A stretch of DNA of 64,000 nucleotides, taken from IMG/VR virus record IMGVR_UViG_3300020469_003050, positions 124,001-188,000 of that record; one strand, 5' to 3'. The notes under the pieces are model-generated. The model had not been told where the DNA came from and made no database searches. It worked only from the letters and a program-made list of their open reading frames with translations. A program made the position numbers and the translations under genes. The first letter of the stretch is position 1. Every line of letters begins with the position of its first letter. Shown piece by piece: positions 5,260 through 28,513 of the stretch.

Positions 5260-5267
5260 GATAAATA
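5260..5267 (+). promoter_or_regulatory. T4-like late promoter GATAAATA
   Basis: Same octamer as upstream of the structural operons; lies directly after a terminator and 26 nt before the ATG at 5294. Confidence 0.65.
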
Positions 5268-5293
5268 AAGTATGTAGTTAATAGAGAATTAAA

Positions 5294-5680
5294 ATGAAAA
5301 GAATTATTAAACTAGACCCAGATATAAATCCAATAACAGTTAAAGACGGTAGAGGTATAATAAGTACATTCTATCCACAAACAACTGATATCAAAGAGTG
5401 GAGTTATATAGTAACTCTCAAAGGGTCTGTAAGAGGACATCATCTACACAAAGAGTTTGACGAATATATTATGTTTGTAGAAGGCAGTGGCGTATATACT
5501 GAATTAACAGACGGAGAAGAACTCGTTACTCCTGTAGCAACTGGTGATTGTATCTTTATTCCTAGACTAACACCTCATACGTTTTACCCAACTTCTGATT
5601 CAAAAGCAATCGCTCTTATAACAAAGAAATGGAATGATTGTGATGAACCTTTGACAAGAGTAAACAATGAAGAAACGTAA
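5294..5680 (+). CDS. cupin, NDP-sugar epimerase/isomerase-like (RmlC/FdtA class)
   Basis: DGRGII, KGSVRGHHLHKEFDEY, IFIPRLTPHTF. Confidence 0.75.
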   Translation: MKRIIKLDPDINPITVKDGRGIISTFYPQTTDIKEWSYIVTLKGSVRGHHLHKEFDEYIMFVEGSGVYTELTDGEELVTPVATGDCIFIPRLTPHTFYPTSDSKAIALITKKWNDCDEPLTRVNNEET

Positions 5681-6893
5681 AAAGAATATCAGAATGATTT
5701 TAAATGAACGTACTACTTGTAGAGTATGTGGAAGTCCTGTAAAAGAATTACATGACTTTGGTAGAATACATATCAATGATTTCCCTACAACACCCGATGA
5801 TACTCCTGGCGAGGCACCAATGGTATTAGACCAATGTGAGGAATGTGAGTTAGTTCAACTTAGACATACAGTTAATCCAAAGATATTATATGGTGAACAC
5901 TATTGGTATGAGAGTGGATTGAATTCTAAACTAATGAATAACTTATTTGATATTGCAGGATACGTAAATGAGTATACTGATAAAGGCGATGTAGTATTAG
6001 ATATCGGTGCGAATGATGGTACGTTGTTAAGTGCGGTTAAGTCAGACAGATATAGAATAGGTTGCGAACCAGCACCTAATCTAATTAAGAAGTTAATGAA
6101 AAACTGTGAAGCAACTATAAACGATATGTGGCATTATAAACTAATGCAAGGAAAGAAAGCAAAAGTTATTACTGCTATTGGTATGTTCTATGATATGGAT
6201 AACCCAAATGATTTTATCTATAGTGTGAATGAAGCATTAACAGATGATGGCATATTCATTGCACAGTTAATGACACTTGCTCCTATGCTTAAAATGAAAG
6301 ACTTAGGCAATGTATGTCATGAGCATTTAGAATACTATAGTTATAAAAGTCTTGTAGAACTATATGAAACTAACGGTCTTGAAATCTATAAAGTAGTAGA
6401 GAACGATATACAAGGTGGAAGTTATCAACTATGGGCTAGAAAAAAGAACGAAGGCAGTATAGAATATTTTGAAGACTTATCTTCTTTAGAAACATTCTTT
6501 AAAGATGTAGAACGTAATGGTATGTTGTTAAGAACTGTATTACAAGATTCAAAATCAAATGGTAAAAAGAATTATGTATATGGTGCTAGTACAAAAGGAA
6601 ATACAATGTTACAGTTTTGGAAACTACATGATTTATTCGAAGGTGCCGCAGAAATACATCCAGATAAAGTAGGAAGATATACAGTTGGAACAGGCATACC
6701 TATTGTACATGAAGATGATGCAAAGAAAGATGCAGACTTATTCTTTGTCCCTAATTTTGGTTTCAAAGATATGTTTGTTGAAAAAGAAAGTGAATGGCTT
6801 GAACAAGGAGGAAGAATGCTCTTTGCAATGCCAGATGTTAATGTAGTAGAACACAAAGGAAAAAATGGAACAAAAGATAGTATACGTGACTAA
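5667..6893 (+). CDS. NDP-hexose 3-C-methyltransferase (TcaB9/EryBIII/NovU-like)
   Basis: Zn site CRVC...CEEC, YWYESG, VLDIGANDG, CHEHLEYYS, YGASTKGNT. Confidence 0.88.
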   Translation: MKKRKKNIRMILNERTTCRVCGSPVKELHDFGRIHINDFPTTPDDTPGEAPMVLDQCEECELVQLRHTVNPKILYGEHYWYESGLNSKLMNNLFDIAGYVNEYTDKGDVVLDIGANDGTLLSAVKSDRYRIGCEPAPNLIKKLMKNCEATINDMWHYKLMQGKKAKVITAIGMFYDMDNPNDFIYSVNEALTDDGIFIAQLMTLAPMLKMKDLGNVCHEHLEYYSYKSLVELYETNGLEIYKVVENDIQGGSYQLWARKKNEGSIEYFEDLSSLETFFKDVERNGMLLRTVLQDSKSNGKKNYVYGASTKGNTMLQFWKLHDLFEGAAEIHPDKVGRYTVGTGIPIVHEDDAKKDADLFFVPNFGFKDMFVEKESEWLEQGGRMLFAMPDVNVVEHKGKNGTKDSIRD

Positions 6894-7020
6894 AGAACAG
6901 ATAACTTGTATGGGAGAAGATGGAGACCACCCTAAAGTTTATTATACTCTTAAAAAAGGTGAAGCAGTTTGCGGATATTGTAATATCAAATACGTACTAG
7001 TTAAGGAGAAAGAAAAATGA
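6865..7020 (+). CDS. zf-CHCC zinc-finger protein (51 aa)
   Basis: MEQKIVYVTKEQITCMGEDGDHPKVYYTLKKGEAVCGYCNIKY...; C-x6-H-x13-C-x2-C pattern; RBS AAGGA; ATGA overlap with the next gene. Confidence 0.8.
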   Translation: MEQKIVYVTKEQITCMGEDGDHPKVYYTLKKGEAVCGYCNIKYVLVKEKEK

Positions 7021-7910
7021 AAATCGCAATAACAGGTGGGGCAGGATATGTTGGTTGTAGATTAAGTGAACAACTATTAAACAACGGACATGAAGTTATT
7101 TGTATAGATTGGTTAAAGTATGGAGTACAACCCATATTAAACATATTAGATAGAAAAGGATTTCATTTACACAAGATAGATATTTGTAGTCCAGAAGTAG
7201 AACCTATTCTAAAAAGTGCAGATGCAGTAATTCATCTAGCAGGTATTGTAGGCTATCCGTCATGTGAACGTGAGCCTGACTTAGCATATAGAGTTAACGT
7301 AGAAGGAACTAATAGAGTTATAGATGCTTCTGTAGGTAAACCTTTTGTATATGCAAGTACAGGAAGTGTATACGGTGAACTTGGTAAGACATGTGATGAA
7401 ACATGTGAGACTAATCCAATTAGTACATACAGTGTTTATAAACTTGATGGTGAAAAGAAATTAAAAGGAACTGATGCAGTTATACTAAGACCAGCAACTG
7501 CATTTGGTGTGAGTAATAGATTAAGACAAGACTTACTTGTTAATGACTTTACTTACAAAGCAATAGCTGAAAAGAAATTGGTCTTATTTGAAAAGCACTT
7601 CAAACGTACTTTCTTAAGCATTAACGACTTGGCACGTTCATTCAGATGGGCGTTAGAGAAATACGATATTATGAAAGGCGAGATATGGAATGTCGGTGAT
7701 GAAACTTTAAATCATACTAAGTTAGACATTGCACAGATTATTAAAAGCAAAGTCGATTATGAATTAATTATTAACGATGAATTATCTCACGATAAAGATG
7801 GCAGAGACTATTTTGTTGACTATACAAAAATTAGAAACATCGGGTTCACTGCTACCGAAACTCTTGAAGATGGTATTGATAGTTTAGTTAAGTTGTATCA
7901 CGCCGCGTGA
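7017..7910 (+). CDS. NAD-dependent epimerase/dehydratase (extended SDR)
   Basis: ITGGAGYVG, VIHLAGIVG, ASTGSVYG, YSVYK (YxxxK). Confidence 0.9.
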   Translation: MKIAITGGAGYVGCRLSEQLLNNGHEVICIDWLKYGVQPILNILDRKGFHLHKIDICSPEVEPILKSADAVIHLAGIVGYPSCEREPDLAYRVNVEGTNRVIDASVGKPFVYASTGSVYGELGKTCDETCETNPISTYSVYKLDGEKKLKGTDAVILRPATAFGVSNRLRQDLLVNDFTYKAIAEKKLVLFEKHFKRTFLSINDLARSFRWALEKYDIMKGEIWNVGDETLNHTKLDIAQIIKSKVDYELIINDELSHDKDGRDYFVDYTKIRNIGFTATETLEDGIDSLVKLYHAA

Positions 7911-8971
7911 TTTTTAACAACACTTGCAATCTTTTTTACGTCTTCTTCACGTAAATTAAACTGACCAGGTAAATGCAAACCTCTACTTGCTAGTTCGTCT
8001 GCTATTGGTGTAGGCGTTCTGTACTTTCTATGAAAAGGTTGATTACAAAGACTATCGTATACTGCACGACAACCTATACCTTCTGCACGTAGTTCTTCTA
8101 CGAGATTATCTCTTTTGCTTACTAGTATCTCTGGATACGTAGGTGTCTGATGTTCTAAATCTGTAGGGATAAAGTCTACTACTTTCTTTAAATGTTTACG
8201 ATACCATTTGAATAATTGTTTCTTGTGTTGTACGATGAATGGTAACTTCTTCATTTGTGGCACACCGAATGATGCTTGTAAGTCTGTGAATTTAAAATTC
8301 AATCCCATTACGTTATATACTTCTCCGACTTTAACTGTTCTGCCAAAGTTTTTTATAGCATGAATTTGTTTACTAATATTCTCATCATTAGTAACTATGC
8401 AACCACCTTGTCCTGTAGTAATAATCTTTGGTGCACCGAAACTAAATATTCCCATGTCACCCATAGTACCACAGTGTACATCATTGACTGTTTTACTTCC
8501 TAATGCTTGTGCAGAGTCTTCGATTACAATCTTACCACTCTCTCTTAGAGATTTAATTTTTTCTTCAACGTCTTTAGGATATCTACCATTGATTGCTGAT
8601 ACAAATATAACTCTACAATCTGTTGGTATCTTATCAAAGTTTATACAGTAATTGAATGGGTCAACATCTACTATTACAGGAACACCGCCCATTAATATTG
8701 CACCATTACATGTAGCCGCTTGAGTATATGCACTTACGGCAAACTTCTCTCCTGGCTTGATATTAGCTATCATAGAAGCACACAGGAGACCCGTAGTAGC
8801 ACTTGTTACCATGTGTGCATACTTGGCACCTGTATAGTCACATATAAGAGATTCTAATTCTCTGGTTTTATCGTGTTCCATAATCCACCCACCAGAGTTG
8901 ACGTAGTTATAAACACTCTCAATTTCTTCTTTCCCGTATACGGGATTCATGTGACTATTCTTTGTGAGCAT
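7898..8971 (-). CDS. DegT/DnrJ/EryC1/StrS PLP-dependent sugar aminotransferase
   Basis: VIEDSAQALGS, FSFGAPKIITTGQGG (PLP lysine), GLNFKFTDLQA. Confidence 0.93.
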   Translation of the reverse strand: MLTKNSHMNPVYGKEEIESVYNYVNSGGWIMEHDKTRELESLICDYTGAKYAHMVTSATTGLLCASMIANIKPGEKFAVSAYTQAATCNGAILMGGVPVIVDVDPFNYCINFDKIPTDCRVIFVSAINGRYPKDVEEKIKSLRESGKIVIEDSAQALGSKTVNDVHCGTMGDMGIFSFGAPKIITTGQGGCIVTNDENISKQIHAIKNFGRTVKVGEVYNVMGLNFKFTDLQASFGVPQMKKLPFIVQHKKQLFKWYRKHLKKVVDFIPTDLEHQTPTYPEILVSKRDNLVEELRAEGIGCRAVYDSLCNQPFHRKYRTPTPIADELASRGLHLPGQFNLREEDVKKIASVVKNHAA

Positions 8972-9921: not shown

Positions 9922-10827
9922 TCATGCTTCTTGTGTTCCATTATCATAATACCACTTATATGTTTTGGCGAATGCATCTTCCATAGAGTATTTAGGAACC
10001 CACCCTAACTCTTTTAAACGTGAGTTGTCTATCGCTCTGTTTTTAATTCCTTCAGGTCTATCAGTATTGAACCAAAGTTTGCCTTTGTACCCACTGACTT
10101 TAATTAATAGTTCAGCTATTTCTCTAATAGAAATCTCAAAACCACTTGCTACGTTAACTGTATCATACTTGTCGTTGTTTAGAATTATATCCATTGCCTC
10201 AACTGCATCTTCAATATAAAGTATATCTCTGCTTTGATTACCGGAACCCCATATCTCAATACTGTCTGAATTGTTTTTACATGCATCGACAAACTTTTGC
10301 ATTAATGCACCTATGACATGTGCATGTTCTCCTACTCTATCGTGTGGTCCAAACATGTTTGTATTGATTGCAGTACGCCAATGTGTATCATACTTTTCAT
10401 TACTTGCTCTACATTGATACATACCCATTAGCTTAGGCAAAGCAGTTGGGAAGTAAGTAGAGTACGGTTCGCCTTGTAGTAACTGAGTTTCTTTATATGG
10501 TTGTTCGCCAATCTCAGGATAACTACATGTGCTTCCTTGTAGTAATACTCTATCTGTTCTTGCAAAACGACACGCCTCAAATATATTATTTTGAATTGTT
10601 AAGTTCTTAATCATTAACTCAAAACTCTTATCTAAGTCTTCTTGTAAGCCACCTACAGTAGCCGCATTTATAACTACGTGTGTGGGCTTCTTTATATGTA
10701 TGTCTTGTTTAGTTGAGATACGTGACGTATAGTTTGCATTTTGAGTATTGCCTCCTTCTGCATCAGGTATTAGTTTCTTATACCACGTTCCTACTAGTCC
10801 TCTATCTCCTGCTATATAGTATTTCAT
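9922..10827 (-). CDS. fcl: GDP-L-fucose synthase-like epimerase/reductase
   Basis: IAGDRGLVG, AATVGG, NLTIQNN, GSTCSYP, NMFGPHD, IWGSGNQSRDILYIED. Confidence 0.85.
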   Translation of the reverse strand: MKYYIAGDRGLVGTWYKKLIPDAEGGNTQNANYTSRISTKQDIHIKKPTHVVINAATVGGLQEDLDKSFELMIKNLTIQNNIFEACRFARTDRVLLQGSTCSYPEIGEQPYKETQLLQGEPYSTYFPTALPKLMGMYQCRASNEKYDTHWRTAINTNMFGPHDRVGEHAHVIGALMQKFVDACKNNSDSIEIWGSGNQSRDILYIEDAVEAMDIILNNDKYDTVNVASGFEISIREIAELLIKVSGYKGKLWFNTDRPEGIKNRAIDNSRLKELGWVPKYSMEDAFAKTYKWYYDNGTQEA

Positions 10828-13439
10828 TCATTCTTTTCCTTATGAATAATAAAGTAATTATTCATTTCTAAAGTTGGACAATGTTTAGTTGACTGAGGCT
10901 TCTGATGTCCTCTATGTTCGCTTTGCCATGTCGCAACGGTGCCTTGTTCATTTCTAAATCCATCAAACGATGAGTAAGCATATGGGAACGGTTGTATGAC
11001 TGCACTGCCGCCAACATTGAGTTGACTCATAATACACTTTGTAAAATAATGTATGTCATTAACATCATACGGTGCAAAGAATGTATTAGTATCTTTATTC
11101 TTGTCTACTACTTGCCATGCCTGTGATATGTTTCCATTTAGTAGTCTTACAATTTTATCTGTTTTCCAGAATACGTTTGACATATTCATAAGTATTATAT
11201 CATATCTTTCCGCAGAATCAAAGTCTTTTCCGTACATATTGTCGCTATTGTCTAACAAATCAAAAGGAGTCTGAGGCTCAATATGTATATCTGCTGGTTC
11301 TGTTATACCTAATGTCTTCCAAATAAGTTTAAGTTCATCAAGCGAATCACCTGCTTCTTTGTATGAGTTAGTAGAATGTACATTTGTAAATCCTTGACTT
11401 TTTAAGAAGTGAGGCATAAATCCAAAGTGTGTTCCTATATCAAGTATCTTAATATCTTTAGGTGCATAGTTTAATCCTAAGTTATCAAGTATCATACTAT
11501 GATTAACCCAATATGCAGACTCTAAAGATGACTCTAGGTATTGTGAATGTCTTTTTAGTTTCTTAGTTAATACTTTGTATTCTTTTTTATAAACGTCTTT
11601 GAATGTATCAAAGTATTGTTCAAACCCTACACCTATCTTTGCGATGTTGTGTGGTTTTCTAAATCTCCAAGAACCATATTCATTATACATTGTCCAATCC
11701 CATTTATAGTTTTCATCTACGAATAAAATTTCTTCTGGAGTTAATTGACGTGGAGTATGTATTTCTTCTTCGTATAATATATCTGCGATGCGCCTTCCTG
11801 AATCTCTGTGACCAAAATCATCGTTCCAATCTTTGCATCTTGCATAATAACCTTCACGATGTATGTCGTCCATATCAATAGTATAACAAACATTTAGGTC
11901 ATACATGTAACCAGTCTGTTCTAACAAGTCATTATTAACATCATCATTGTTTTCTAAGTAACTTGCGTATCTTTTATGAGGGTGTCTTGTAATCGCAATA
12001 GCTGGTATTTTAGATACGTTATCTAAATTATTTTTATCAACTAATCTATATGCAAGTCTAGGTGCAACTTTGTTTTTTATTGCACCGTCTAAATTTCCTG
12101 CTATAGGTATAATTATTGTATTTGTGTTTTCACTATACCATACATATTTTGTCTTTTCTCTTTTAACTTCTTCATCATCTGCTTTGTCTTCTAATTGAGG
12201 TTTGTAGTCTAATAAACTCAAAGACTTGAATGCATCTTTGTATACACTAGGTGTATATACATTTTTATAATGATTGTAGTTGTGTTCTAATATTTCTTGT
12301 AATTCTTTACTGTATGTTATTCCATTCTTTACGTCAACTGTATCTACAATTTCTTTTACAACATCAGTTATAGCATCTATTCTTTCTTCGTAAGCTAATT
12401 CATCATAGCTTTCATCCCAAAATTTATCAAACGTTTTGAACCCTAAGTTTTTTATATTTCTTAAATACTTTCTATCACCTACTATAATGAAAGGTTTCTT
12501 ACATAGTATTGCTTGTGAAAGTTTTTCACTTATCGAAACATACTCATCACTGTGCGTAAACTCTGTAATTAGTTCTACGTATGTTCTCTTTCTATATGGA
12601 AGTAATTCTTCTATTCTGTTTAAAGATGAACTTGCTAACCATTCGTCCCTCTGACAATTCATACTATATGGCAATTCTGTTTTATAATAATCCCATAATA
12701 TTTTATTAGCCATATCTTTATTATATACATCTGGTACTCTGCCGTATATTGCATTTACATCACTATCATATAGAGGATCACCTTCTCCTCTATTATTTGT
12801 ACCAAGAAAACTAAAGTAGAAATTATCTTTTATATTAACTTTCTTTTCTAACAACTTACTTAAAGTGTCAAGTCGATGTGGTCTAATTCTTTTATTAAGA
12901 AATAGAACGTGTTTGTTTGTTAACTCATCTTCTGAAAATTCCCATTTTTCGTGATACTCATTTGATACTTTGTTTTCTTCGTAATCTGAAAATCTTAAAG
13001 TACTAGATGAAACAGTCAAGTAATCTATTGATCCTTTTGGTTTTAGATGTTCATACATAGACCAATACTTTACATTCTTTGCATATGATTTAGTAGAATA
13101 AAACTTATCTATCTTCTCATAGTAACTAAATGGTATAAGTTCTGCACCCATATCGAATACAATACAAGTATTACCTTGCTCTAAATCTTTTGTGATAGAC
13201 TTGTCGTTCAATACTTCATCGATTAGTTTATCAGTAAGAGTTAAGTAATCATACCCATCAAATTCATCTTCATCAAAATACTTACATGCTATCCAAGGAG
13301 AAACAAAATAATATTTTTCAAACCTAACAGTAGGGTGTAACTCATCAACAAAGTTTTGATATAAGTCATAATGCTGAGGTTCGCCATGTATAGTTTTGAT
13401 TAAAGGTGAACGATTTATTATCCATTTATTATAGTACAT
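10824..13439 (-). CDS. 871 aa fusion: glycosyltransferase-like + sulfotransferase-like + class I methyltransferase domains
   Basis: N-part LFLNKRIRPHR...ISEKLSQAILCKKPFIIVG...LGFKTFDKFWDESYD; middle ITRHPHKRYASY...FVDENYKWDWTMY; C-part KILDIGTHFGFMPHFL. Confidence 0.6.
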   Translation of the reverse strand: MYYNKWIINRSPLIKTIHGEPQHYDLYQNFVDELHPTVRFEKYYFVSPWIACKYFDEDEFDGYDYLTLTDKLIDEVLNDKSITKDLEQGNTCIVFDMGAELIPFSYYEKIDKFYSTKSYAKNVKYWSMYEHLKPKGSIDYLTVSSSTLRFSDYEENKVSNEYHEKWEFSEDELTNKHVLFLNKRIRPHRLDTLSKLLEKKVNIKDNFYFSFLGTNNRGEGDPLYDSDVNAIYGRVPDVYNKDMANKILWDYYKTELPYSMNCQRDEWLASSSLNRIEELLPYRKRTYVELITEFTHSDEYVSISEKLSQAILCKKPFIIVGDRKYLRNIKNLGFKTFDKFWDESYDELAYEERIDAITDVVKEIVDTVDVKNGITYSKELQEILEHNYNHYKNVYTPSVYKDAFKSLSLLDYKPQLEDKADDEEVKREKTKYVWYSENTNTIIIPIAGNLDGAIKNKVAPRLAYRLVDKNNLDNVSKIPAIAITRHPHKRYASYLENNDDVNNDLLEQTGYMYDLNVCYTIDMDDIHREGYYARCKDWNDDFGHRDSGRRIADILYEEEIHTPRQLTPEEILFVDENYKWDWTMYNEYGSWRFRKPHNIAKIGVGFEQYFDTFKDVYKKEYKVLTKKLKRHSQYLESSLESAYWVNHSMILDNLGLNYAPKDIKILDIGTHFGFMPHFLKSQGFTNVHSTNSYKEAGDSLDELKLIWKTLGITEPADIHIEPQTPFDLLDNSDNMYGKDFDSAERYDIILMNMSNVFWKTDKIVRLLNGNISQAWQVVDKNKDTNTFFAPYDVNDIHYFTKCIMSQLNVGGSAVIQPFPYAYSSFDGFRNEQGTVATWQSEHRGHQKPQSTKHCPTLEMNNYFIIHKEKNE

Positions 13440-22892: not shown

Positions 22893-23873
22893 CTATTTGT
22901 CCCAACCGGTTTGCTTCTCTGTTGCTAATGGGTTGTTAACTCTTGGTGGGTTAGTGTAAACACGTTTAAAAAAAGATGCTACTTCTGGTGTTGGGTCACA
23001 TAATTCCATATCCATTTTATCTACTAAGATATCACCGATTTCTAAACATGCATCAAATAGTTTTTCATAATTCCATTCTACTTTTGTCTTTTCGCACTTC
23101 TGGTCTCCGCCTTGAAATTTAGGAAGCACTGTGTTATCAAAGTATTCTTTAAACCAGTCAAAGCTAGAAATGTTTGCTAGAATAAAATCAGGGTTAAGAT
23201 TTGTATCGTAACAACCTAATCTTGCACCGTAACATGCCCATATACCATTCTCTACATTTGCACCAATGTTCATCCATGTAATTAGACGTTCATAGTTCTT
23301 AGGCCATATACGTTTTTTAAATTCGTCTACTGGTACTTTCTTGCCTTCATCAAGTGACATTTTAGAACCTTCACGATAACCTGCACGAAAGGCTTGAAAC
23401 GGTGAGCCTGCATTATGTACTGTTGAATAAATGTTATTCATCTGAATATAATTTAAGTCCCAACAAAAATCTACTTTCTTTGTTTCGTCTACTGCGTTTT
23501 CATGTGTCTTCATATCTAATACAAGTTTCACTGGCCAGCATTTAATACCACCATTACCATATACTAGACCGTTTACTACATTCTTTGCAGACCAACTAAT
23601 AACTGAATTTTCTAAATCAGTACCAGCTGGAAATGTTAGTTCGATATCGAAAAACTTCTCATCTACGATATTATCACCATCAATAGTAACAAATCTTTCT
23701 GTATCACTTTGTCTTGCACATTCTTTGTGTGCGTTGTCAAATCCTTTGACACCATCTACTCTTTTTGCAAATGGAAATTTACTTATAATATCTGCCCAAT
23801 GTTCTTCTTTATTAGGCTCATCGTAACTTAGATAAAAAACATCTAATTCACCGATTTCTAGTTTGCTCATCAT
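22893..23873 (-). CDS. GT-A-fold glycosyltransferase-like protein
   Basis: DVFYLSYDEP...GVKGFDNAHKECA...FVTIDGDN (DxD). Confidence 0.55.
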   Translation of the reverse strand: MMSKLEIGELDVFYLSYDEPNKEEHWADIISKFPFAKRVDGVKGFDNAHKECARQSDTERFVTIDGDNIVDEKFFDIELTFPAGTDLENSVISWSAKNVVNGLVYGNGGIKCWPVKLVLDMKTHENAVDETKKVDFCWDLNYIQMNNIYSTVHNAGSPFQAFRAGYREGSKMSLDEGKKVPVDEFKKRIWPKNYERLITWMNIGANVENGIWACYGARLGCYDTNLNPDFILANISSFDWFKEYFDNTVLPKFQGGDQKCEKTKVEWNYEKLFDACLEIGDILVDKMDMELCDPTPEVASFFKRVYTNPPRVNNPLATEKQTGWDK

Positions 23874-24454
23874 GTTCTCCTGAATGAATATGTTTCCAGA
23901 AACTTCTGGGTATATAAACTTATACTGTATTTATTATATTCGAATTTAACTCTAGTTTCAGAACTCAATAACTTTGCGAACGGAATAGAGACTGTTTGTA
24001 TAATAAAATCTGGTCTGTTTTCATATGTTATGAAAAATGGGTGATGAGTTTTACCTGCAACTGTAACATTTTGATGTTCATCTACGTTTGCATTCTTTAT
24101 TACTTCTTTACTAGGAGAAAAGCAAAGTTCTGAACCATCCCATGTTACTGATATGTCACAATACTTTGTATCTGGCAAATTGTATAACTGAGTATCTTTG
24201 CTTCTTTGTTTTATATCTACCTTAGACTTAATAATCTCGTAAACAAATATATCATCTGTGCTTACAACTTTATAGTCTGAGAACTTAAAATCTCCAGTAA
24301 GAAAAGGTAATATAGCTTCCATAGAAAACCATGCACTCTTAAGTAATGGGTTATCTTCTGTTTGATTAGATGAAATACTAAGTATATCACCTGCATCATT
24401 GAAGTATACTACTCTTGCCTTTTCAGTTTCATGTGTGAACCCGGTGCTTCTCAT
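23870..24454 (-). CDS. hypothetical protein
   Basis: 194 aa ORF with 4-nt overlaps on both sides. Confidence 0.7.
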   Translation of the reverse strand: MRSTGFTHETEKARVVYFNDAGDILSISSNQTEDNPLLKSAWFSMEAILPFLTGDFKFSDYKVVSTDDIFVYEIIKSKVDIKQRSKDTQLYNLPDTKYCDISVTWDGSELCFSPSKEVIKNANVDEHQNVTVAGKTHHPFFITYENRPDFIIQTVSIPFAKLLSSETRVKFEYNKYSISLYTQKFLETYSFRRT

Positions 24455-25308
24455 ATATTCAGTGCCTTTTCATACATATTAATTTTTTCTTCTGTTAGCC
24501 ATTTCTTTTCAACGTAATGAAAAGGAAGTGACTGTTCGTAATTAGCTACACGAATTTTTAAGTCATGTGTCAACGTACTTGGTATACTATCTGTCCAAAT
24601 ACCTGATATCTTATTGTTAGGAATATTTTGAATATAACTTTTCATATGTACGAATGTAGGTACATCTTTAATATCATTATCAATAACTTCCTCTTCTAAA
24701 TCTAATAAACGTATAGCCAATGCATATGCCAAGTCTGCACTCATCCAGTCTTGACCTGTTCCTTTAAGAAATTTATCATAGTACACATTCCAATGAACCA
24801 TAATCAATTCAATCATTTTAAACAATTCGAATGCAGTATCAGATTCTTTAAAATACGTGAAGTTACTATATATGTTTGGTAAGTCTAATTGTGTAAATTT
24901 CTTACGATAATAATCGTCTGTTATTTGTTCATTTCTAAATGTCTTAACATGTGTACATGCCCAAACATCTTTCTTAGATAAATGTTCCCACCAATGGTCA
25001 ACAGGGTGTGTGAACAAAACATCTGTATCAAGAATGATAGTTTCTTTGAATGGTGTCATGTGTGGATACTTCCACTTGTTATGAATTTTCCATTTGTCTG
25101 CACCAGCATCATCATTCCATGGGATATCAACTATATGGTCAAACACTTCTTTGTGCTTACCAGTAAGTTGTGTTTTAGTATACTCATCAACGCATACACA
25201 AATTGCATTTTCTTTTTGTGTTGCTTTGAGTGATAAGGCTAAACCATATGCTTGAGTAAGATAATCATATGTACTATTCTGTGCTATGCAAATATATCCT
25301 CTACTCAT
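24451..25308 (-). CDS. GT8-like glycosyltransferase
   Basis: GYICIAQN...YLTQAYGLALSLK, TPFKETIILDTDVLF (DxD), VHMK. Confidence 0.7.
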   Translation of the reverse strand: MSRGYICIAQNSTYDYLTQAYGLALSLKATQKENAICVCVDEYTKTQLTGKHKEVFDHIVDIPWNDDAGADKWKIHNKWKYPHMTPFKETIILDTDVLFTHPVDHWWEHLSKKDVWACTHVKTFRNEQITDDYYRKKFTQLDLPNIYSNFTYFKESDTAFELFKMIELIMVHWNVYYDKFLKGTGQDWMSADLAYALAIRLLDLEEEVIDNDIKDVPTFVHMKSYIQNIPNNKISGIWTDSIPSTLTHDLKIRVANYEQSLPFHYVEKKWLTEEKINMYEKALNI

Positions 25309-26174
25309 AGAGTATCTCCTTGAGCCAATAGTTTATCTATATTACGTTCTATTGCAGACTTATTCATAATGTGTATATCTGTGTTAGTGAATCTAGCTAA
25401 TACATGTTCAGTTGTTTTCTCAGGCTTAGCACAATACATTATAATATCGTTGCTACTATTTACTCTAAAAATATCATCTAAATCGAAACTATTGTTTAGA
25501 TAGTCCATAGGTAGCGATGGTACGTTAGATGCTACTTGTCCATTTAAGATATGAACAGCCATTGAAAATGCAAAATCATTTCTGAATAATGTACCCGAAC
25601 AATTATACAAGTAGTAATAATACTTATAGTTTTCTTTTATGTGACTAACTAAAGTAAATAAGTTTTCAGTGTATTCAGATTTTCTAAAATAGAACACTGT
25701 TGCCCAATACATTGGTATGGAGAAATCATCAATATAGGATATGTTACCGCCATGTCTACCAGCAACATCCCTATATTGACAATTAATCATGAAGTCGTTT
25801 TCACTACCCCATACTTGGTCAAGTGTGTTACTCATTACAAAGTAATCACAATCGATAACCAAACTTTCTTCGTAAGGTGAGAGGTCATATATGTCGCTAC
25901 GTGACATATTGACAAAAGGTGCATACTGCGATTGGTTTGCAGTATCCTTAAATAGTCTTATATTACTATCTTGTTTTGATGCGGAAATAATAGTTCTATC
26001 GAAATACTTGTTTACTAATTCTTCATTATCTAATAATGACTCGTTGTTTGTAACTAAAGCAATTTCATCAAAACCTGATAAGTTCTTTCTAACATAACCT
26101 GCACATGTACATGCAATTTTTATGTAATCTAGTAACCCATTATTTGTCGCAAAGATTATAATTCCTTTGCTCAT
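25305..26174 (-). CDS. GT8-like glycosyltransferase (paralog of the 24451 gene)
   Basis: GIIIFATNN, SPYEESLVIDCDYFV (DxD), RNDFAFSMA, IHIMNK. Confidence 0.7.
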   Translation of the reverse strand: MSKGIIIFATNNGLLDYIKIACTCAGYVRKNLSGFDEIALVTNNESLLDNEELVNKYFDRTIISASKQDSNIRLFKDTANQSQYAPFVNMSRSDIYDLSPYEESLVIDCDYFVMSNTLDQVWGSENDFMINCQYRDVAGRHGGNISYIDDFSIPMYWATVFYFRKSEYTENLFTLVSHIKENYKYYYYLYNCSGTLFRNDFAFSMAVHILNGQVASNVPSLPMDYLNNSFDLDDIFRVNSSNDIIMYCAKPEKTTEHVLARFTNTDIHIMNKSAIERNIDKLLAQGDTL

Positions 26175-26557
26175 TAGATTTCCAAGACCTTCTCAATCTT
26201 ACGTGAACTACGTAACTTTTGATAGTCATTATAGTATTCATTGATAACTTCAAAATACAAACTAGAAATATCTTCTAGGAACTTAGTAGTATCTTCAATT
26301 TTAACTGGAATATCATTCTTATCAAGCAAGATTACTTCTGTCTTGCCTGCACTAACAATAGTACTCATAAATCCAATTAACTCTTGCGATACTTTAAATG
26401 TACCACCATAACTACTGTAACTCAGTAAATTCTGTGTTTTAACTTTTAGGTTGTTTTTATTAAGGTTGAAAGTCTGCATAGTGTTCGAAAACTCTAATGC
26501 TCTTTCTAGCCGTTCAAGTTCGGTACTTGAAGGCGTAATATTCTCTTTTTTTGACAT
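26174..26557 (-). CDS. hypothetical protein
   Basis: Likely start ATG 26557 (MSKKENITP) with RBS AAGGAG. Confidence 0.7.
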   Translation of the reverse strand: MSKKENITPSSTELERLERALEFSNTMQTFNLNKNNLKVKTQNLLSYSSYGGTFKVSQELIGFMSTIVSAGKTEVILLDKNDIPVKIEDTTKFLEDISSLYFEVINEYYNDYQKLRSSRKIEKVLEI

Positions 26558-26581: not shown

Positions 26582-26610
26582 ATAATACAAGAAAATAGGG
26601 CGTTTGTCAA
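26582..26610 (-). promoter_or_regulatory. sigma70-type promoter heading the minus-strand glycan/radical SAM operon
   Basis: Minus strand TTGACA-N17-TATTAT. Confidence 0.65.
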
Positions 26611-26613
26611 GCC

Positions 26614-27567
26614 TTAAAGTTGTGAAATGTGCGAAAATGTTGGGGAAGTGATTACTACACCATTACCTGATGCATCTTGGTCGTCTGCACGTAGCAAATC
26701 TAGTTGTACTGTTAGAGTTCCTGCTACGTAATCTGTCAAATTGAACGTACTTGTAGTGTAAGCATCAATAAAATCTAGCTTAAAATCTATAGCATTATTG
26801 CCATTTAGTCTAGCATATACTTCAAATTGGTTATTTGTATAGTATCCACTGCTACCATCACCGCCTGATTTTTCGTAGATTTTAGCATATGTTGATGTTA
26901 AAGATGTAAATCCTCCAGCTGGAGTACCTACACCGCCTGTCGCTTCTGTAAGATTATGACTTAGTTTTAATATACCGATATTAGAAAACATCGTTTGCCA
27001 ATCTACACTTTGCTTGTGTGATGCATCAACACCTGTTAATGATGTATCTATTCTTAAGTCACTGCCTGTATTAAAGAAATGTCTACGTGCATCTTCATCT
27101 GCAAATATAACAGATACTTCATAGTTTACGTTTGAACTCCAAGTGTGTACTGCGCCAGCACCTGGAACATCGAATGTTTTTGATGATGATATTTTGTTTG
27201 ACTCTGCCGTCATTTGTGCTATGTCAAAGTTTAATTTATTTGCACGAACATTGGTGATATCTACTTCTAAGTTCGGTAGCAATTTAATTATTTGTCCTGC
27301 AGAAGGAAACTCAGGGTCATTAGTATCTTCCGGTGAGTTGATAGTAGTGCCCTGATGTCTTCCTGCAAATTTTAAGGCAGTTAGGAGTAACTGCATATGA
27401 GAAGCATTAATTTTTGTGCCACTTGCTACGTGAGGGATAACGAGTTGGTCTTGACCATAACCTGAGTCGCCCGCACCAATTCCAACAATTTCGTTTATAT
27501 CATCTGCGAAACCGTTATAATCGGATGCTCGTATCTTTCCTCCTAAGTAGTAACTTTGTGGTGCCAT
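26614..27567 (-). CDS. virion structural protein (fibre/baseplate-associated)
   Basis: N-terminal IRASDYN...GYGQ; FADEDARRHFFNTGSDLRI is shared with the neighbouring paralog; S/T/G-rich. Confidence 0.6.
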   Translation of the reverse strand: MAPQSYYLGGKIRASDYNGFADDINEIVGIGAGDSGYGQDQLVIPHVASGTKINASHMQLLLTALKFAGRHQGTTINSPEDTNDPEFPSAGQIIKLLPNLEVDITNVRANKLNFDIAQMTAESNKISSSKTFDVPGAGAVHTWSSNVNYEVSVIFADEDARRHFFNTGSDLRIDTSLTGVDASHKQSVDWQTMFSNIGILKLSHNLTEATGGVGTPAGGFTSLTSTYAKIYEKSGGDGSSGYYTNNQFEVYARLNGNNAIDFKLDFIDAYTTSTFNLTDYVAGTLTVQLDLLRADDQDASGNGVVITSPTFSHISQL

Positions 27568-27601
27568 CTTATTAACCTATCTCTTTTCATTAGAAAATCT
27601 A

Positions 27602-28513
27602 TTAAGCTAGATTGTCTATTACCGTAAAACTTGGGTTCGAAATATTTACAGAACCCGCATCGGAGTTAGCTAACTTCAATGAATTGACTGTTACTGTAGA
27701 TGTGCCTACCACTTGGTCTGCACCTGTCCATGACCATGCTCCGCCATATCCTGAACCAGAATCTGACCTCGCTGTATGGGCATCTACCAATTTAATTTTA
27801 ACAAAAACTTGATTGGTATCTTTGTATGCTTCGATGCATATATAGTTTGAACTATAATCACTATCGTCTGCATATTCTTTTTTAATTTCTGTATAAGAAC
27901 CAGTTAAGTCTGAATATTTTTTACGTGTTGAAGAATCAACGTTAGTTGAGTCTGTTGGACGTACTGAAATTCTGTATGTTCCTAATTCTGCTGTTAATTG
28001 CTCCCATGAAGTTCCTTGCTGATTGTTAGTTGTATCATTGTGTGATGCAGTAACTCGGATTTCTCCGCCAGCTGAGAACCATGCATCCATATTGTTTGCA
28101 TCTGAGAATGTAACTCTTACGATTTGTATTTTCTCACCGTTCCAGTCACTCACTGTTTGTGAAGTTTCCTGTGTTACACTCATGTCCCAACCACTTGAAT
28201 TGTTCCAAGGATTATCAAAGTGGTCACTGATAGTTGAAGTAAAAGACGTTGCATCGTTAAAAAATTGCTCATCTTCAATTACATCACCAGCATTAACCGC
28301 CGTAAAAGGATTTGTAATGTTATAATAATTTGCTACCTTACTTGCCGCAGAAAAAATAGAATCTTGATATGCATCATCGATTGTATCACCTGCCGCAGGG
28401 TTGGCCGCTACCGTGTGACTTTGGTTATAGCCACCGTGAACACCTGTTCCGTTTAGTATCGAATTCAAGGTGTCTCTTAGTGTACTTAAGTCACTGTTTG
28501 ATATCACCGCCAT
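27602..28513 (-). CDS. virion structural protein, paralog of the 26614 gene
   Basis: GYNQ...FSDANNMDAWFSAGGEIRV; both proteins end in a similar xSPTF/NPSF motif. Confidence 0.6.
   Translation of the reverse strand: MAVISNSDLSTLRDTLNSILNGTGVHGGYNQSHTVAANPAAGDTIDDAYQDSIFSAASKVANYYNITNPFTAVNAGDVIEDEQFFNDATSFTSTISDHFDNPWNNSSGWDMSVTQETSQTVSDWNGEKIQIVRVTFSDANNMDAWFSAGGEIRVTASHNDTTNNQQGTSWEQLTAELGTYRISVRPTDSTNVDSSTRKKYSDLTGSYTEIKKEYADDSDYSSNYICIEAYKDTNQVFVKIKLVDAHTARSDSGSGYGGAWSWTGADQVVGTSTVTVNSLKLANSDAGSVNISNPSFTVIDNLA

What the first reader, a model, noticed from the sequence alone, without database searches (positions are those of the whole stretch)
5260..28513. A 21 kb glycan synthesis and radical-tailoring island abutting the virion fibre and baseplate genes: candidate undescribed phage glycosylation system
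Seen: two convergent, tightly coupled operons encode NDP-sugar enzymes, three GT-A-like proteins, a GT-like/ST-like/MT fusion, a sulfotransferase, SGNH proteins and five radical SAM enzymes. The plus-strand arm starts at a late promoter (5260). The minus-strand arm follows two S/T/N-rich structural paralogs on the same strand and also has its own sigma70 promoter (26582-26610). Established: virion glycosylation with virus-made rare sugars is known in giant eukaryotic viruses and a few phages, but not with a radical SAM battery. Inference: the island builds a heavily modified (C-methylated, aminated, acylated, sulfated, radical-rearranged) glycan on tail or capsid proteins. The alternatives are the host surface or the DNA.
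Basis: partly seen in the sequence, partly recalled or inferred. Interest (0 to 1): 0.85.

Follow-up and report, generated by a model that had tools for sequence, protein, structure and literature searches.

The report
Phage glycosyltransferase and radical-SAM protein-tailoring module
A family of giant ocean phages (and one cultured soil phage) always carries, next to its tail-fibre genes, a set of sugar-attaching enzymes plus a battery of unusual radical enzymes. The bacterial relatives of these enzymes modify small peptides, so the phage set probably decorates a phage protein in a way not yet described.

Summary
There are five radical SAM (rSAM) enzymes: four N-terminal-twitch type (NF033640) and one SPASM type. 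There are three divergent GT-A glycosyltransferases: two GT8/glycogenin-like and one from a new, very abundant family. There are five NDP-sugar tailoring enzymes, and both promoters hold up. The "sulfotransferase" and the "GT/ST/MT fusion" could not be verified.

The region is not one island. The part from 26611 down to about 14686 is a module kept in fixed order in all 59 related viral contigs with enough sequence, and in Ralstonia jumbo phage RsoM2USA. It is more conserved than the baseplate. Only the distal part (5294-14686) is a swappable cassette.

The main new evidence is bacterial. Bacterial members of the new GT family are fused to GT-B transferases and sit in peptide-modifying (RiPP-like) clusters. 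In the four contexts examined, each has a double-glycine-leader peptide, a C39-ABC exporter, or both. One also has a true N-twitch rSAM.

No island protein has a membrane segment, and the window holds no DNA-hydroxymethylation genes. The best reading is cytoplasmic glycosylation plus radical tailoring of a phage protein, probably the fibre-like proteins encoded just upstream. The acceptor is unproven. This is a new variant of virus-encoded protein glycosylation, and it is directly testable in RsoM2USA.

The parts
2698..3543 (+). Cytidylyltransferase-like domain plus mannose-6-P-isomerase-type cupin; possible sugar activation step.
   Evidence: Pfam CTP_transf_like 52.7 bits, MannoseP_isomer 68.1 bits
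5231..5251 (+). Intrinsic-terminator-like hairpin ending the FG-GAP gene unit
   Evidence: 8-bp stem, 6 GC pairs, T run
5260..5267 (+). GATAAATA, candidate late-type promoter of the plus arm
   Evidence: Same octamer upstream of structural operons at 29274, 42937 and 54969. Conserved before the 223-aa gene in all 59 loci and before the cupin gene in L011 and L015.
5294..5680 (+). Small cupin, FdtA/RmlC-like (keto-sugar isomerase or epimerase candidate)
   Evidence: Cupin_2 34.7 bits; FdtA weak, E 1.3e-3
5667..6893 (+). NDP-hexose C-methyltransferase
   Evidence: Methyltransf_14 73.5 bits, Methyltransf_13 38.6 bits, Methyltransf_23 39.1 bits
7017..7910 (+). SDR NDP-sugar epimerase/dehydratase/reductase
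   Evidence: Epimerase 121.9 bits; below every NCBIfam equivalog cut-off
7898..8971 (-). PLP sugar aminotransferase (DegT/PseC/LegC-like)
   Evidence: DegT_DnrJ_EryC1 221 bits
8955..9977 (-). 340-aa unknown protein. Its HPSIEG motif resembles SGNH block V. Unverified.
   Evidence: No Pfam, NCBIfam or PDB match; alignment A13
9922..10827 (-). GDP-L-fucose-synthase-like 3,5-epimerase/4-reductase
   Evidence: NF047922 223 bits, below the cut-off of 500; Epimerase 109 bits
10824..13439 (-). 871-aa multidomain protein of unknown fold. Its residues ~175-410 form a mobile domain found elsewhere fused to GDSL, DegT and SDR enzymes; the whole protein is fused to the SPASM rSAM in relatives.
13439..14686 (-). 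Radical SAM enzyme with C-terminal SPASM domain (part of the variable cassette)
   Evidence: Radical_SAM 39.9 bits, SPASM 22.5 bits. Fused to the 871-aa protein in L015, P0273 and P0274.
14686..15873 (-). N-terminal-twitch radical SAM enzyme (conserved ortholog group 1)
   Evidence: NF033640 364.6 bits; 74-100% identical in 18 loci
15875..16687 (-). SGNH/GDSL-like esterase or acyltransferase candidate
   Evidence: Invariant S15, G63, H246; links to Pfam GDSL relatives; PDB thermolabile hemolysin E 0.008
16677..17690 (-). 337-aa unknown protein that recurs inside rSAM arrays
17663..19093 (-). N-terminal-twitch radical SAM enzyme (group 2)
   Evidence: NF033640 327.9 bits; 78-100% identical in 18 loci
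19053..19784 (-). 243-aa unknown protein. Invariant RxGST and R..D..S blocks resemble PAPS-binding motifs. Sulfotransferase unverified.
   Evidence: Alignment A10; no Pfam, NCBIfam or PDB match
19781..21328 (-). N-terminal-twitch radical SAM enzyme (group 3)
   Evidence: NF033640 306.5 bits
21318..22886 (-). N-terminal-twitch radical SAM enzyme (group 4). It directly follows the 326-aa GT in most loci resolved gene by gene and in RsoM2USA; in the L046/L058/L064 group more divergent rSAM-like genes follow instead.
   Evidence: NF033640 297.8 bits
22893..23873 (-). Glycosyltransferase of a new GT-A family (DxD at D65/D67)
   Evidence: More than 7,600 relatives, none with a Pfam domain among the 120 listed. 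1,362 50%-clusters. Model pLDDT 94.7. GT-A fold matches only. Fusions to GT-B transferases.
23870..24454 (-). 194-aa protein of unknown function, the least conserved core member
24451..25308 (-). GT8/glycogenin-like retaining glycosyltransferase
   Evidence: Profile match to glycogenin E 7e-5; invariant DxD and H..K
25305..26174 (-). GT8/glycogenin-like glycosyltransferase, paralog of 24451-25308
26174..26557 (-). 127-aa first gene of the core module. The real start is probably the ATG at 26557, after an AAGGAG ribosome-binding site.
26582..26611 (-). Sigma70-type promoter of the core module (CTTGACA-17-TATTAT)
   Evidence: 8 sites against 0.17 expected; conserved in relatives
26614..27567 (-). 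S/T/N-rich, Cys-free, fibre-like protein; candidate acceptor
27602..28513 (-). Paralog of 26614-27567; candidate acceptor
   Evidence: E 2e-11; shared invariant N-terminal D..N.I....GY.Q motif
28577..29248 (-). 223-aa protein conserved across Rak2/PA5oct-type jumbo phages. It heads the downstream string and has GATAAATA at 29274-29281.
   Evidence: phrog_11259; 93 phage records

Best explanation
The region holds two things.

(1) Core module, about 26611 down to 14686 on the minus strand, conserved across the lineage. It comprises a 127-aa protein, two GT8-like glycosyltransferases, a 194-aa protein, a glycosyltransferase of a new GT-A family, and four paralogous N-terminal-twitch radical SAM enzymes. 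An SGNH-like protein and two unknown proteins are interspersed. In most of the lineage, including the window, it has its own sigma70-type promoter.

(2) Replaceable cassette, 5294-14686. It makes and tailors 6-deoxy, C-methyl and amino NDP-sugars, and adds a SPASM rSAM and an 871-aa multidomain enzyme.

Proposed mechanism (inferred): all enzymes are soluble and act in the cytoplasm. The GTs build a short glycan directly on a phage-encoded protein from host or cassette NDP-sugars. The rSAM enzymes then carry out radical chemistry on that glycopeptide, either on amino-acid side chains or on the attached sugars. The cassette sets a strain-specific sugar decoration. The most likely acceptors are the Cys-free, S/T/N-rich fibre-like proteins encoded immediately upstream, or another virion surface protein.

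Shown here: enzyme families, intact catalytic motifs, synteny, conservation, promoter motifs, and the bacterial peptide-cluster context of both key families.
Inferred: the acceptor, the order of steps, and the chemistry.
For: - Families and motifs.
- Fixed order [223 aa]-[S/T/N protein(s)]-[127]-[GT8]-[GT8]-[194]-[GT-A 326]-[rSAM array] in every one of 59 viral contigs with enough downstream DNA. The same module is in RsoM2USA ORF354-349, near the MS-identified virion proteins ORF361/359/356 (PMC8504454). It is also in more distant phage contigs L086 and L094.
- Strong constraint. In L079 the GT-A protein is 79% and the rSAMs 72-76% identical, against baseplate wedge 50%, the giant protein 45% and the 223-aa protein 57%.
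- Bacterial kin modify peptides. In the four GT-B+326-domain fusion contexts examined, all four have a double-glycine-leader peptide (...AGG|YG..) and three of four have a Peptidase_C39-ABC exporter. In L091 there is also an rSAM scoring 339.9 bits on NF033640.
- Foldseek lists the glycocin S-glycosyltransferases SunS/ThuS and the mycobacteriophage Che8 GT among the GT-A matches.
- Gene fusions tie the SPASM rSAM and the GDSL, DegT and SDR enzymes to the 871-aa protein, so they work in one pathway.
- No membrane segment in any island protein.
- The plus-arm sugar genes carry the same GATAAATA motif as the structural operons. In L086 that motif precedes the module's first gene.
Against: - No glycan or modified residue has been observed on any protein.
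- In the window's lineage the core module has a host-type sigma70 promoter, like presumably early genes, so co-expression with fibres is not shown.
- In L094 no structural neighbour was recognised.
- XacN1 and Rak2-type relatives lack the 326-aa gene, so the module is not needed by all phages with this baseplate.
- N-twitch rSAMs in Bdellovibrionota and CPR genomes sit in rSAM arrays without GTs or exporters.
- The nearest solved structures include sugar-acting BlsE and BtrN as well as peptide maturases, so the family's substrate class is open.
- The phage module has no leader peptide or C39 protease.
- All GT assignments are remote (E 1e-3 to 1e-5; TM 0.25-0.34).
Confidence: 0.45

Rival explanations
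1. Host-envelope remodelling. The enzymes make unusual NDP-sugars and transfer them to host LPS, capsule or another envelope glycan during infection (superinfection exclusion or receptor masking), as proposed for the LPS gene clusters of cyanophages and for seroconverting phages.
For: - The cassette enzymes (C-methyltransferase, DegT, SDRs, cupin) are typical of O-antigen and capsule loci.
- GT8 includes LPS transferases (established knowledge).
- The core has a sigma70-type promoter.
- The window also carries host-metabolism-type genes: AdoMet decarboxylase and a polysaccharide lyase.
Against: - No flippase, polymerase, ligase, polyprenyl-phosphate transferase or any membrane segment.
- The core sits at a fixed position beside fibre genes in all 59 loci and is more conserved than the baseplate, unlike accessory host-modifying genes.
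- Bacterial kin of the key GT and rSAM are in peptide clusters.
Confidence: 0.15
2. DNA hypermodification. The GT-A enzymes glycosylate a modified base in phage DNA, and the rSAM, aminotransferase and methyltransferase enzymes elaborate it to evade restriction.
For: - GT-A-fold DNA glycosyltransferases that install diverse glycans exist in phages (bioRxiv 10.1101/2023.12.21.572611).
- From memory, not checked here: rSAM and PLP enzymes take part in some thymidine hypermodifications.
- The module has a sigma70-type promoter.
Against: - No hydroxymethylase, 5mYOX/TET, C5-methyltransferase, kinase or aGPT-Pplase was recognised in the 64 kb window.
- The module lies among structural genes, not replication genes.
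- The GT family's bacterial members sit with leader peptides and peptide exporters.
- The rest of the ~342 kb genome was not examined.
Confidence: 0.1
3. A free product. The module makes a soluble glycosylated, radical-modified peptide or small molecule (antibiotic-like, signalling or cofactor-like, compare glycocins or mycofactocin) rather than decorating the virion.
For: - The bacterial homolog clusters look like exported glyco-RiPP pathways.
- Mycofactocin combines an rSAM with a glycosyltransferase (MftF) that oligoglycosylates the product (PMC7491314, from its title and abstract).
- Tandem rSAM arrays occur in bacteria.
Against: - The phage genes are packed end to end, with no small ORF carrying a double-glycine leader and no C39/ABC exporter. 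No motif scan for leaders was run.
- The 127-aa first gene looks like a conserved globular protein, not a precursor.
- Its universal position beside fibre genes is unexplained under this reading.
Confidence: 0.12
4. The rSAM battery acts only on nucleotide sugars (epimerisation, dehydration, C-C or C-methyl chemistry, as for BtrN, BlsE and DesII-type enzymes). It supplies exotic donors to the GTs; the peptide is never a radical substrate. This is a variant of the main model and matches the reader's 'radical-tailored glycan'.
For: - The N-terminal domain aligns with the BtrN twitch domain (E 1.7e-4), and the core aligns with BlsE cytosylglucuronate decarboxylase (E 1.5e-7).
- The SPASM rSAM is fused to a protein whose domain also fuses to DegT and SDR sugar enzymes.
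Against: - Relatives lacking the whole NDP-sugar cassette keep four to nine rSAMs.
- The best PDB match is the RiPP cyclopropylglycine synthase 8VPO (E 3e-9; PMC10878394).
- An N-twitch rSAM sits in a leader-peptide cluster.
Confidence: 0.18

Closest known systems
Virion glycosylation gene clusters of giant viruses (chlorovirus PBCV-1 capsid glycans with multidomain A064R; Mimivirus/Megavirus fibril glycosylation clusters).
   Same: - Virus-encoded GT-A transferases together with virus-encoded rare-sugar synthesis (aminotransferase, SDRs, methyltransferase).
- Soluble cytoplasmic enzymes.
- Sugar gene sets that vary between clades.
- A large multidomain enzyme.
   Different: - Those are eukaryotic viruses.
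- They have no radical SAM enzymes.
- Their GT families differ.
- There the glycan on the virion is chemically proven; here nothing is measured.
Mycobacteriophage virion O-glycosylation (Che8-type GTs; Freeman et al. 2023, PMC10527164, as cited in PMC12619734)
   Same: - Phage-encoded GT-A glycosyltransferases thought to act on structural proteins.
- The Che8 GT appears among the fold matches.
   Different: - The match is only fold-level (TMq 0.31, 9% identity).
- No rSAM battery and no sugar-nucleotide cassette.
- The hosts are actinobacteria.
Glycocin-type glyco-RiPP pathways (SunS/ThuS S-glycosyltransferases with double-glycine-leader peptides and C39-ABC exporters)
   Same: - Bacterial members of the 326-aa family sit with double-glycine-leader peptides and, in three of four contexts, C39-ABC exporters.
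- SunS and ThuS are among the PDB fold matches.
   Different: - The phage module has no leader peptide, protease or exporter.
- The bacterial enzymes are GT-B+GT-A fusions.
- Glycocin pathways have no rSAM.
Mycofactocin pathway (rSAM/SPASM MftC plus GT2 MftF; PMC7491314)
   Same: An rSAM and a glycosyltransferase act on one ribosomal-peptide-derived product.
   Different: - MftC is a C-terminal SPASM enzyme, not N-terminal twitch.
- It has one rSAM, not a battery.
- The product is a small redox cofactor.
- No homology beyond the superfamily was shown here.
NF033640 'twitch domain-containing radical SAM protein' (NCBIfam subfamily)
   Same: Four window proteins pass its cut-off over their full length and keep all cluster-binding cysteines.
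   Different: I found no paper assigning the family a substrate or reaction. Membership therefore names the fold, not the function.
LPS/O-antigen gene clusters carried by marine cyanophages (for example P-SSM2; recalled from memory)
   Same: NDP-sugar tailoring genes in a marine myovirus.
   Different: - Here there are no membrane assembly proteins.
- The core is lineage-universal and lies beside fibre genes.
- It has an rSAM battery.

Membership tests
NF033640 N-terminal-twitch radical SAM | Full-length match above the curated cut-off (170 bits) | tested here: met
   364.6, 327.9, 306.5 and 297.8 bits for 14686-15873, 17663-19093, 19781-21328 and 21318-22886. Gene 13439-14686 scores only 47.8 bits and is not a member.
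NF033640 N-terminal-twitch radical SAM | CX3CX2C SAM cluster plus four N-terminal Cys for the auxiliary cluster, and a GGEP motif | tested here: met
   Invariant C6, C25, C75, C78, C131, C135, C138 and G196-G197-E198-P199 in 14 paralogs
NF033640 N-terminal-twitch radical SAM | Reductive SAM cleavage and a defined substrate | not testable with these tools
   No biochemical literature found
Radical SAM/SPASM | Radical_SAM and C-terminal SPASM domains above Pfam gathering scores | tested here: met
   Gene 13439-14686: 39.9 bits (cut-off 29.5) and 22.5 bits (cut-off 21.5)
GT8 (glycogenin/LgtC-type retaining GT-A) | Sequence-profile membership | tested here: inconclusive
   No Pfam or NCBIfam hit. 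The profile of 11 homologs matches glycogenin at E 7e-5, but only over the N-terminal ~105 residues.
GT8 (glycogenin/LgtC-type retaining GT-A) | DxD metal/nucleotide motif and a C-terminal His | tested here: met
   Invariant D94, D96, H264 and K268 in both paralog groups
GT-A fold glycosyltransferase (326-aa protein) | GT-A fold | tested here: met
   Model pLDDT 94.7. All top PDB and BFVD matches are GT-A glycosyltransferases or nucleotidyltransferases, but the matches are weak: E 1e-3 to 1e-2, TMq 0.25-0.34.
GT-A fold glycosyltransferase (326-aa protein) | Membership of a described GT family (Pfam GT2 etc.) | tested here: not met
   No Pfam, NCBIfam or PDB sequence match. Only faint Glycos_transf_2 hits in three distant homologs. 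It is therefore a new family.
GT-A fold glycosyltransferase (326-aa protein) | DxD motif | tested here: met
   D65 nearly invariant and D67 invariant in 84 sequences
Virus-encoded virion glycosylation system | Virus encodes GTs and sugar-nucleotide enzymes | tested here: met
Virus-encoded virion glycosylation system | Glycan demonstrated on a virion protein | not testable with these tools
   The RsoM2USA virion MS in PMC8504454 identified proteins only, not modifications
RiPP / glycocin-like biosynthetic cluster | Leader-bearing precursor peptide and leader protease/exporter in the locus | tested here: not met
   Found in the bacterial loci L088, L090, L091 and L093. Absent from the phage window: no C39 or ABC hit and no room for small ORFs.
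RiPP / glycocin-like biosynthetic cluster | Modifying enzymes homologous to those of such clusters | tested here: met
   326-domain fusions, and an NF033640 rSAM at 339.9 bits in L091
Wzx/Wzy- or ABC-dependent surface polysaccharide locus | Membrane proteins: initiating phosphoglycosyltransferase, flippase, polymerase | tested here: not met
   Highest 19-residue hydropathy among the genes inside the finding's coordinates is 1.63, with no clear membrane segment. The flanking FG-GAP gene 3576-5204 reaches 1.70 at its N-terminus. No matching Pfam families.
Phage DNA glycosylation pathway | Neighbouring hydroxymethylase / 5mYOX / C5-MT that creates the acceptor base | tested here: not met
   None in the 64 kb window. 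The rest of the genome was not examined.
NDP-hexose C-methyltransferase (TylC3-type) | Zn-ribbon + SAM-MT + C-terminal Methyltransf_14 architecture | tested here: met
   Gene 5667-6893
Sulfotransferase (243-aa protein) | Profile membership / PAPS-binding fold | tested here: not met
   No Pfam, NCBIfam or PDB hit. Only RxGST and R..D..S motif resemblance.
SGNH/GDSL hydrolase (270-aa protein) | Ser-Gly-Asn-His blocks and profile membership | tested here: inconclusive
   Invariant S15, G63 and H246. Pfam GDSL hits only in relatives, linked by E 4.6e-5 and 1e-3. PDB hit at E 0.008.

The most novel reading that the evidence does not exclude
Virion surface proteins of a widespread clade of marine (and some soil) jumbo phages are matured like RiPPs. 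A dedicated set of glycosyltransferases and up to nine N-terminal-twitch radical SAM enzymes, sharing ancestry with an undescribed bacterial family of exported glyco-peptides, would install glycans and radical-derived modifications on fibre proteins. A swappable sugar cassette would give each phage strain its own particle 'serotype'. This would assign a first function to the NF033640 rSAM family and to a GT family with more than 7,600 sequence clusters in metagenomes.
Probability: 0.3. Interest if true: 0.9.

Novelty: new variant of a known kind. Interest (0 to 1): 0.72.

Why it matters
Protein glycosylation by tailed phages is known from very few cases. As far as I could find, radical-SAM tailoring of a phage protein or its glycan is not known at all.

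This module is not a curiosity of one contig:
- The GT family has more than 7,600 90%-identity clusters and 1,362 50%-identity clusters, with no Pfam or NCBIfam match for any member tested.
- The module is fixed in every related contig examined.
- It is under stronger constraint than the baseplate.

If it decorates virions, it bears on host recognition, on particle stability or stickiness in seawater, and on grazing or immune-type recognition of abundant marine phages.

It also offers entry points to two orphan enzyme families and to an undescribed bacterial glyco-RiPP class.

A cultured phage, RsoM2USA, carries a minimal version with one rSAM, so the question can be tested directly.

Tried and rejected
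- Megablast of the island against 50,697 phage records found nothing.
- tblastn of the SPASM rSAM gave only weak partial hits.
- PDB sequence-profile searches found nothing for the 326-aa family, the 871-aa family, the 243-aa family, the 337-aa family and the 340-aa family.
- Pfam scans of six 871-aa homologs gave only chance-level hits.
- The first AlphaFold run on the 326-aa protein, with 12 close homologs, was poor (pLDDT 55). It was replaced by an 84-sequence alignment.
- The first genome-contig query was too divergent to give patterns. The second returned six bacterial loci with rSAM arrays but no GTs or exporters.
- Literature searches for the N-twitch family, and for jumbo phage plus rSAM plus GT, found nothing specific.
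- The 'moraphage' jumbo lineage (PMC12619734) is a different group.
- I considered the 127-aa first gene as a precursor or substrate. Its alignment looks like a conserved folded protein.
- I considered the invariant GY(G/N)Q Tyr in the fibre-like paralogs as a glycogenin-style acceptor. The most distant homolog has Trp there, so I give this little weight.
- T4's TATAAATA is not this phage's late motif: 1 copy against 12 expected.

Full report
**What the window is.** The window has 34% GC and no tRNA genes. It carries T4-type baseplate wedge and hub/lysozyme genes and gp46/47-like nuclease genes. The wedge protein is 31-32% identical to those of ~350 kb jumbo myoviruses such as Serratia BF, GAP32 and RaK2. 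Megablast finds no close relative among 50,697 phage records. IMG/VR holds identical or near-identical contigs, one of them 342,607 bp. The window therefore comes from an uncultured marine jumbo myovirus.

**Gene content of the finding.**
- The plus arm encodes a cupin, an NDP-hexose C-methyltransferase and an SDR.
- The minus arm starts with a DegT aminotransferase. It continues with a 340-aa unknown, a GDP-fucose-synthase-like SDR, an 871-aa unknown and an rSAM/SPASM enzyme.
- Next come four rSAM enzymes that pass the cut-off of NCBIfam NF033640 (N-terminal twitch domain). They are interspersed with 270-, 337- and 243-aa unknowns.
- The arm ends with unknowns of 326, 194, 285, 289 and 127 aa.
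- The rSAM enzymes keep CX3CX2C, GGEP and four N-terminal cysteines.
- Genes overlap or abut throughout, and the two arms converge with a 13-nt overlap at 7898-7910.
- No encoded protein inside the finding has a clear membrane segment.

**The three glycosyltransferase candidates.**
- The 285- and 289-aa proteins are paralogs. A profile of 11 homologs matches glycogenin (GT8) at E 7e-5 over the first ~105 residues. The DxD pair and a C-terminal His/Lys are invariant.
- The 326-aa protein has more than 7,600 relatives at 90% clustering; none of the 120 listed has a Pfam domain or a meaningful name. At 50% clustering there are 1,362 clusters.
- With 12 close homologs AlphaFold failed (pLDDT 55). 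With 84 diverse homologs it gave pLDDT 94.7.
- Foldseek then returned only GT-A-fold proteins: BcsA, RmlT, WrtF, SunS/ThuS, K4CP, nucleotidyltransferases, and viral GTs including that of mycobacteriophage Che8. Scores were weak (E 1e-3 to 1e-2, TMq about 0.3).
- D65/D67 form a conserved DxD.
- It is a GT-A enzyme of a family not yet in Pfam or NCBIfam.

**Unverified annotations.**
- The 871-aa protein matches no Pfam, NCBIfam or PDB entry. Its family has only 45 members.
- The 243-aa 'sulfotransferase' has only motif-level resemblance.
- The 270-aa protein is weakly linked to SGNH/GDSL enzymes. Pfam GDSL proteins occupy equivalent slots in relatives and connect to it by BLAST (E 4.6e-5 and 1e-3). 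It keeps Ser, Gly and His blocks. Its profile hits a GDSL hemolysin at E 0.008.

**Not one island: a conserved core plus a variable cassette.**
- Eighteen viral loci were fetched around the rSAM at 14686-15873. All keep the four N-twitch rSAM ortholog groups and the 326-aa GT, at 49-100% identity.
- The sugar-nucleotide genes, the 871-aa protein and the SPASM rSAM are present in only some of these loci. Elsewhere they are replaced by GDSL, 2OG-oxygenase-like and unknown genes.
- Some relatives carry eight or nine rSAM paralogs in a row.
- Fifty-nine loci were fetched around the 223-aa gene at 28577-29248. Every one with enough downstream DNA has the same order: 223-aa gene, one or two S/T/N-rich genes, the 127-aa gene, GT8-like, GT8-like, the 194-aa gene, the 326-aa GT, then rSAMs.
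- The GT and rSAMs are more conserved than the structural genes. In L079 the 326-aa GT is 79% and the rSAMs 72-76% identical. The baseplate wedge is 50%, the 2,952-aa protein 45% and the 223-aa protein 57%.
- The variable segment is bounded on the far side by the FG-GAP gene and the AdoMet-decarboxylase block.

**Occurrence elsewhere.**
- Among cultured phages only Ralstonia jumbo phage RsoM2USA has the 326-aa gene. Its ORF354-349 reproduce the module with a single N-twitch rSAM plus a second, truncated GT copy.
- That module lies downstream of ORF362 (baseplate wedge), ORF361, ORF359 and ORF356. The last three were identified in virions by mass spectrometry (PMC8504454). All module genes are annotated as hypothetical.
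- A more distant Tara contig (L086, beside a 6,636-aa protein) and a contig with holin and lysozyme genes (L094) also carry the module.
- In L094 no structural neighbour was recognised.

**Bacterial relatives point to a peptide or protein acceptor.**
- About twenty of the listed 50%-cluster representatives (roughly 715-810 aa) carry the 326-aa domain after a long N-terminal extension. In the five scanned, that extension is a GT-B (GT28/GT1-type) transferase. Others are tandem duplications of the domain.
- I examined four such fusions in context:
  - L088/L089 hold a 113-aa ORF with a double-glycine leader, a Peptidase_C39-ABC exporter, an outer-membrane efflux protein and a further GT.
  - L091/L092 (NCBI GCA_036320465.1) hold a 72-aa double-glycine-leader peptide, two GT fusions, an AprE/HlyD-type protein, a C39-ABC exporter, a 229-aa GT2-like protein and an rSAM.
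  - L093 holds a 77-aa leader peptide and a C39-ABC exporter.
  - L090 holds a 69-aa leader peptide.
- The L091 rSAM scores 339.9 bits on NF033640. It aligns over its full length with the window's rSAMs (E 2e-30).
- Both signature families of the phage module thus co-occur in what look like exported glyco-RiPP clusters.
- This is association, not proof. Other bacterial N-twitch rSAMs (Bdellovibrionota, Dojkabacteria) sit in rSAM arrays without GTs or exporters.
- The nearest solved structures mix the RiPP enzyme TvgB (8VPO, E 3e-9; PMC10878394) and SkfB with the sugar-acting BlsE and BtrN.

**Links inside the cassette.** The SPASM rSAM is fused to the 871-aa protein in L015, P0273 and P0274. 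Residues ~175-410 of the 871-aa protein recur fused to a GDSL enzyme, a DegT aminotransferase and an SDR epimerase. These enzymes therefore work in one pathway.

**Regulation.**
- CTTGACA-N15-19-TATNAT occurs 8 times against 0.17 expected. Seven sites lie directly upstream of a gene start; the eighth (55017) overlaps the annotated TTG start of the next gene. One site is at 26582-26611 before the module.
- That site is conserved in L009, L015 and most of the 59 loci.
- The real start of the first module gene is probably the ATG at 26557, after an AAGGAG site.
- T4's TATAAATA occurs once against 12 expected.
- GATAAATA is not enriched overall: 6 copies against 7 expected. Four of the six lie 20-35 nt before gene starts: the cupin gene and three structural operons.
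- GATAAATA is conserved 26-44 nt upstream of the 223-aa gene in all 59 loci. It also precedes the cupin gene in L011 and L015, and RsoM2USA virion gene ORF356. In L086 it precedes the first gene of the module itself.
- I read it as this clade's late-type promoter element. This is an inference.
- The plus-arm sugar genes would then be co-regulated with the structural genes. The core module uses a host-type promoter in this lineage and the late-type motif in another.
- No terminator-like site separates the fibre-like genes from the module, so read-through is possible.

**Candidate acceptors.**
- The two genes upstream (26614-27567 and 27602-28513) are distant paralogs. They have 0-1 Cys and 25-32% S/T/N, like the other structural proteins here.
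- They evolve faster than the enzymes: one family drops to 32-36% identity and the other is not detected in the most divergent loci.
- Sixty-two homologs share an invariant N-terminal D..N.I....GY.Q segment, with Trp replacing Tyr in the most distant one.
- Its resemblance to the '...GG|YG' junction of the bacterial precursors is noted but not statistically testable.

**Weighing the targets.**
- A host surface polysaccharide is disfavoured. There are no membrane assembly proteins, and the core is conserved like an essential gene set.
- DNA is disfavoured. No acceptor-forming enzymes are in the window, the module sits among structural genes, and the bacterial context is peptide-related. However, GT-A DNA glycosyltransferases exist, and the rest of the genome was not seen.
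- A free peptide product is disfavoured because the phage has no precursor or exporter.
- A phage protein, most plausibly a virion surface protein, is the best-supported acceptor. I put that at roughly 0.45. I put about 0.85 on the region being a glycoconjugate pathway at all.

**Verdict.** This is a lineage-defining GT plus N-twitch-rSAM module, related to bacterial glyco-peptide clusters, with a swappable sugar cassette. It is a new variant of virus-encoded protein glycosylation, built on two enzyme families with no assigned function. A cultured phage is available to test it.

Noticed in passing
window 1241-1272, 3557-3587, 26582-26611(-), 43639-43669, 44651-44679, 45062-45093, 55017-55046, 63290-63319(-): A family of eight near-identical sigma70-type promoters, often preceded by AAAA (AAAACTTGACA). 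Seven lie directly upstream of genes; the site at 55017 overlaps the annotated TTG start of 55018-55944. Observed 8 against 0.17 expected by chance.
   Followed up: partly
window 5260, 29274(-), 42937(-), 54969(-); L027-L085 at ~9957-9975; L019 15434 and 23746; L086 2703, 5362, 6333: GATAAATA behaves as a conserved late-type promoter element of this clade. T4's TATAAATA is depleted (1 copy against 12.3 expected).
   Followed up: partly
window 3576-5204 (+): A 542-aa FG-GAP/VCBS-repeat protein with a hydrophobic N-terminus (possible signal peptide), its own sigma70-type promoter and a strong terminator. It is conserved as the outer boundary of the variable cassette. RsoM2USA also has a VCBS-repeat protein.
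   Followed up: no
window 2340-2723 and 2698-3543 (+): An AdoMet decarboxylase (SpeD-like) gene, followed by an overlapping fusion of a cytidylyltransferase-like domain with a mannose-6-P-isomerase-type cupin. The latter may activate a sugar for the pathway.
   Followed up: no
window 43039-43635 and 43692-44663 (+): A phage-encoded ClpP protease (259 bits), and a polysaccharide lyase (53 bits) with a sigma70-type promoter.
   Followed up: no
L088 705-1046, L090 3254-3463, L091 2212-2430, L093 4876-5109: Bacterial precursor-like peptides with double-glycine leaders, followed by YG / PYG-rich cores. They sit beside GT-B+GT-A fusion enzymes, C39-ABC exporters in three of four cases, and in L091 an N-twitch rSAM. 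This looks like an undescribed glyco-RiPP class.
   Followed up: partly
L015 11188-15075; proteins P0273, P0274: The SPASM rSAM and the 871-aa protein are one 1,291-1,295-aa polypeptide in some relatives.
   Followed up: partly
L079 16311-18128: The ortholog of rSAM 21318-22886 is 605 aa instead of 522, and only 273 residues align in one piece. This suggests an insertion or rearrangement inside the gene.
   Followed up: no
L026 (Vibrio phage K566, OZ196521.1) 10705-15107 and 27017-28072: A cultured 255 kb Vibrio phage has several N-twitch-like rSAM genes in a row, near PagP-like and nicotinamide phosphoribosyltransferase genes. KVP40-type phages have one.
   Followed up: no
L020-L025 (Dojkabacteria and Bdellovibrionota MAGs): N-twitch rSAM genes occur in tandem arrays of two to four, together with B12-binding and other rSAM enzymes.
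   Followed up: partly
window 26614-27567 and 27602-28513; 62 homologs: An invariant N-terminal segment D..N.I....GY(G/N)Q is shared by both fibre-like paralog families, with W for Y in L086. Its function is unknown.
   Followed up: partly
window 29302-38160 (-): A 2,952-aa protein with only 3 Cys, homologous in patches to RsoM2USA virion protein ORF361. The L086 lineage has a 6,636-aa counterpart.
   Followed up: no
L019 13600-14577 (RsoM2USA ORF358): An SDR-like protein (24% identical to 7017-7910) sits among the RsoM2USA structural genes, upstream of the module.
   Followed up: no
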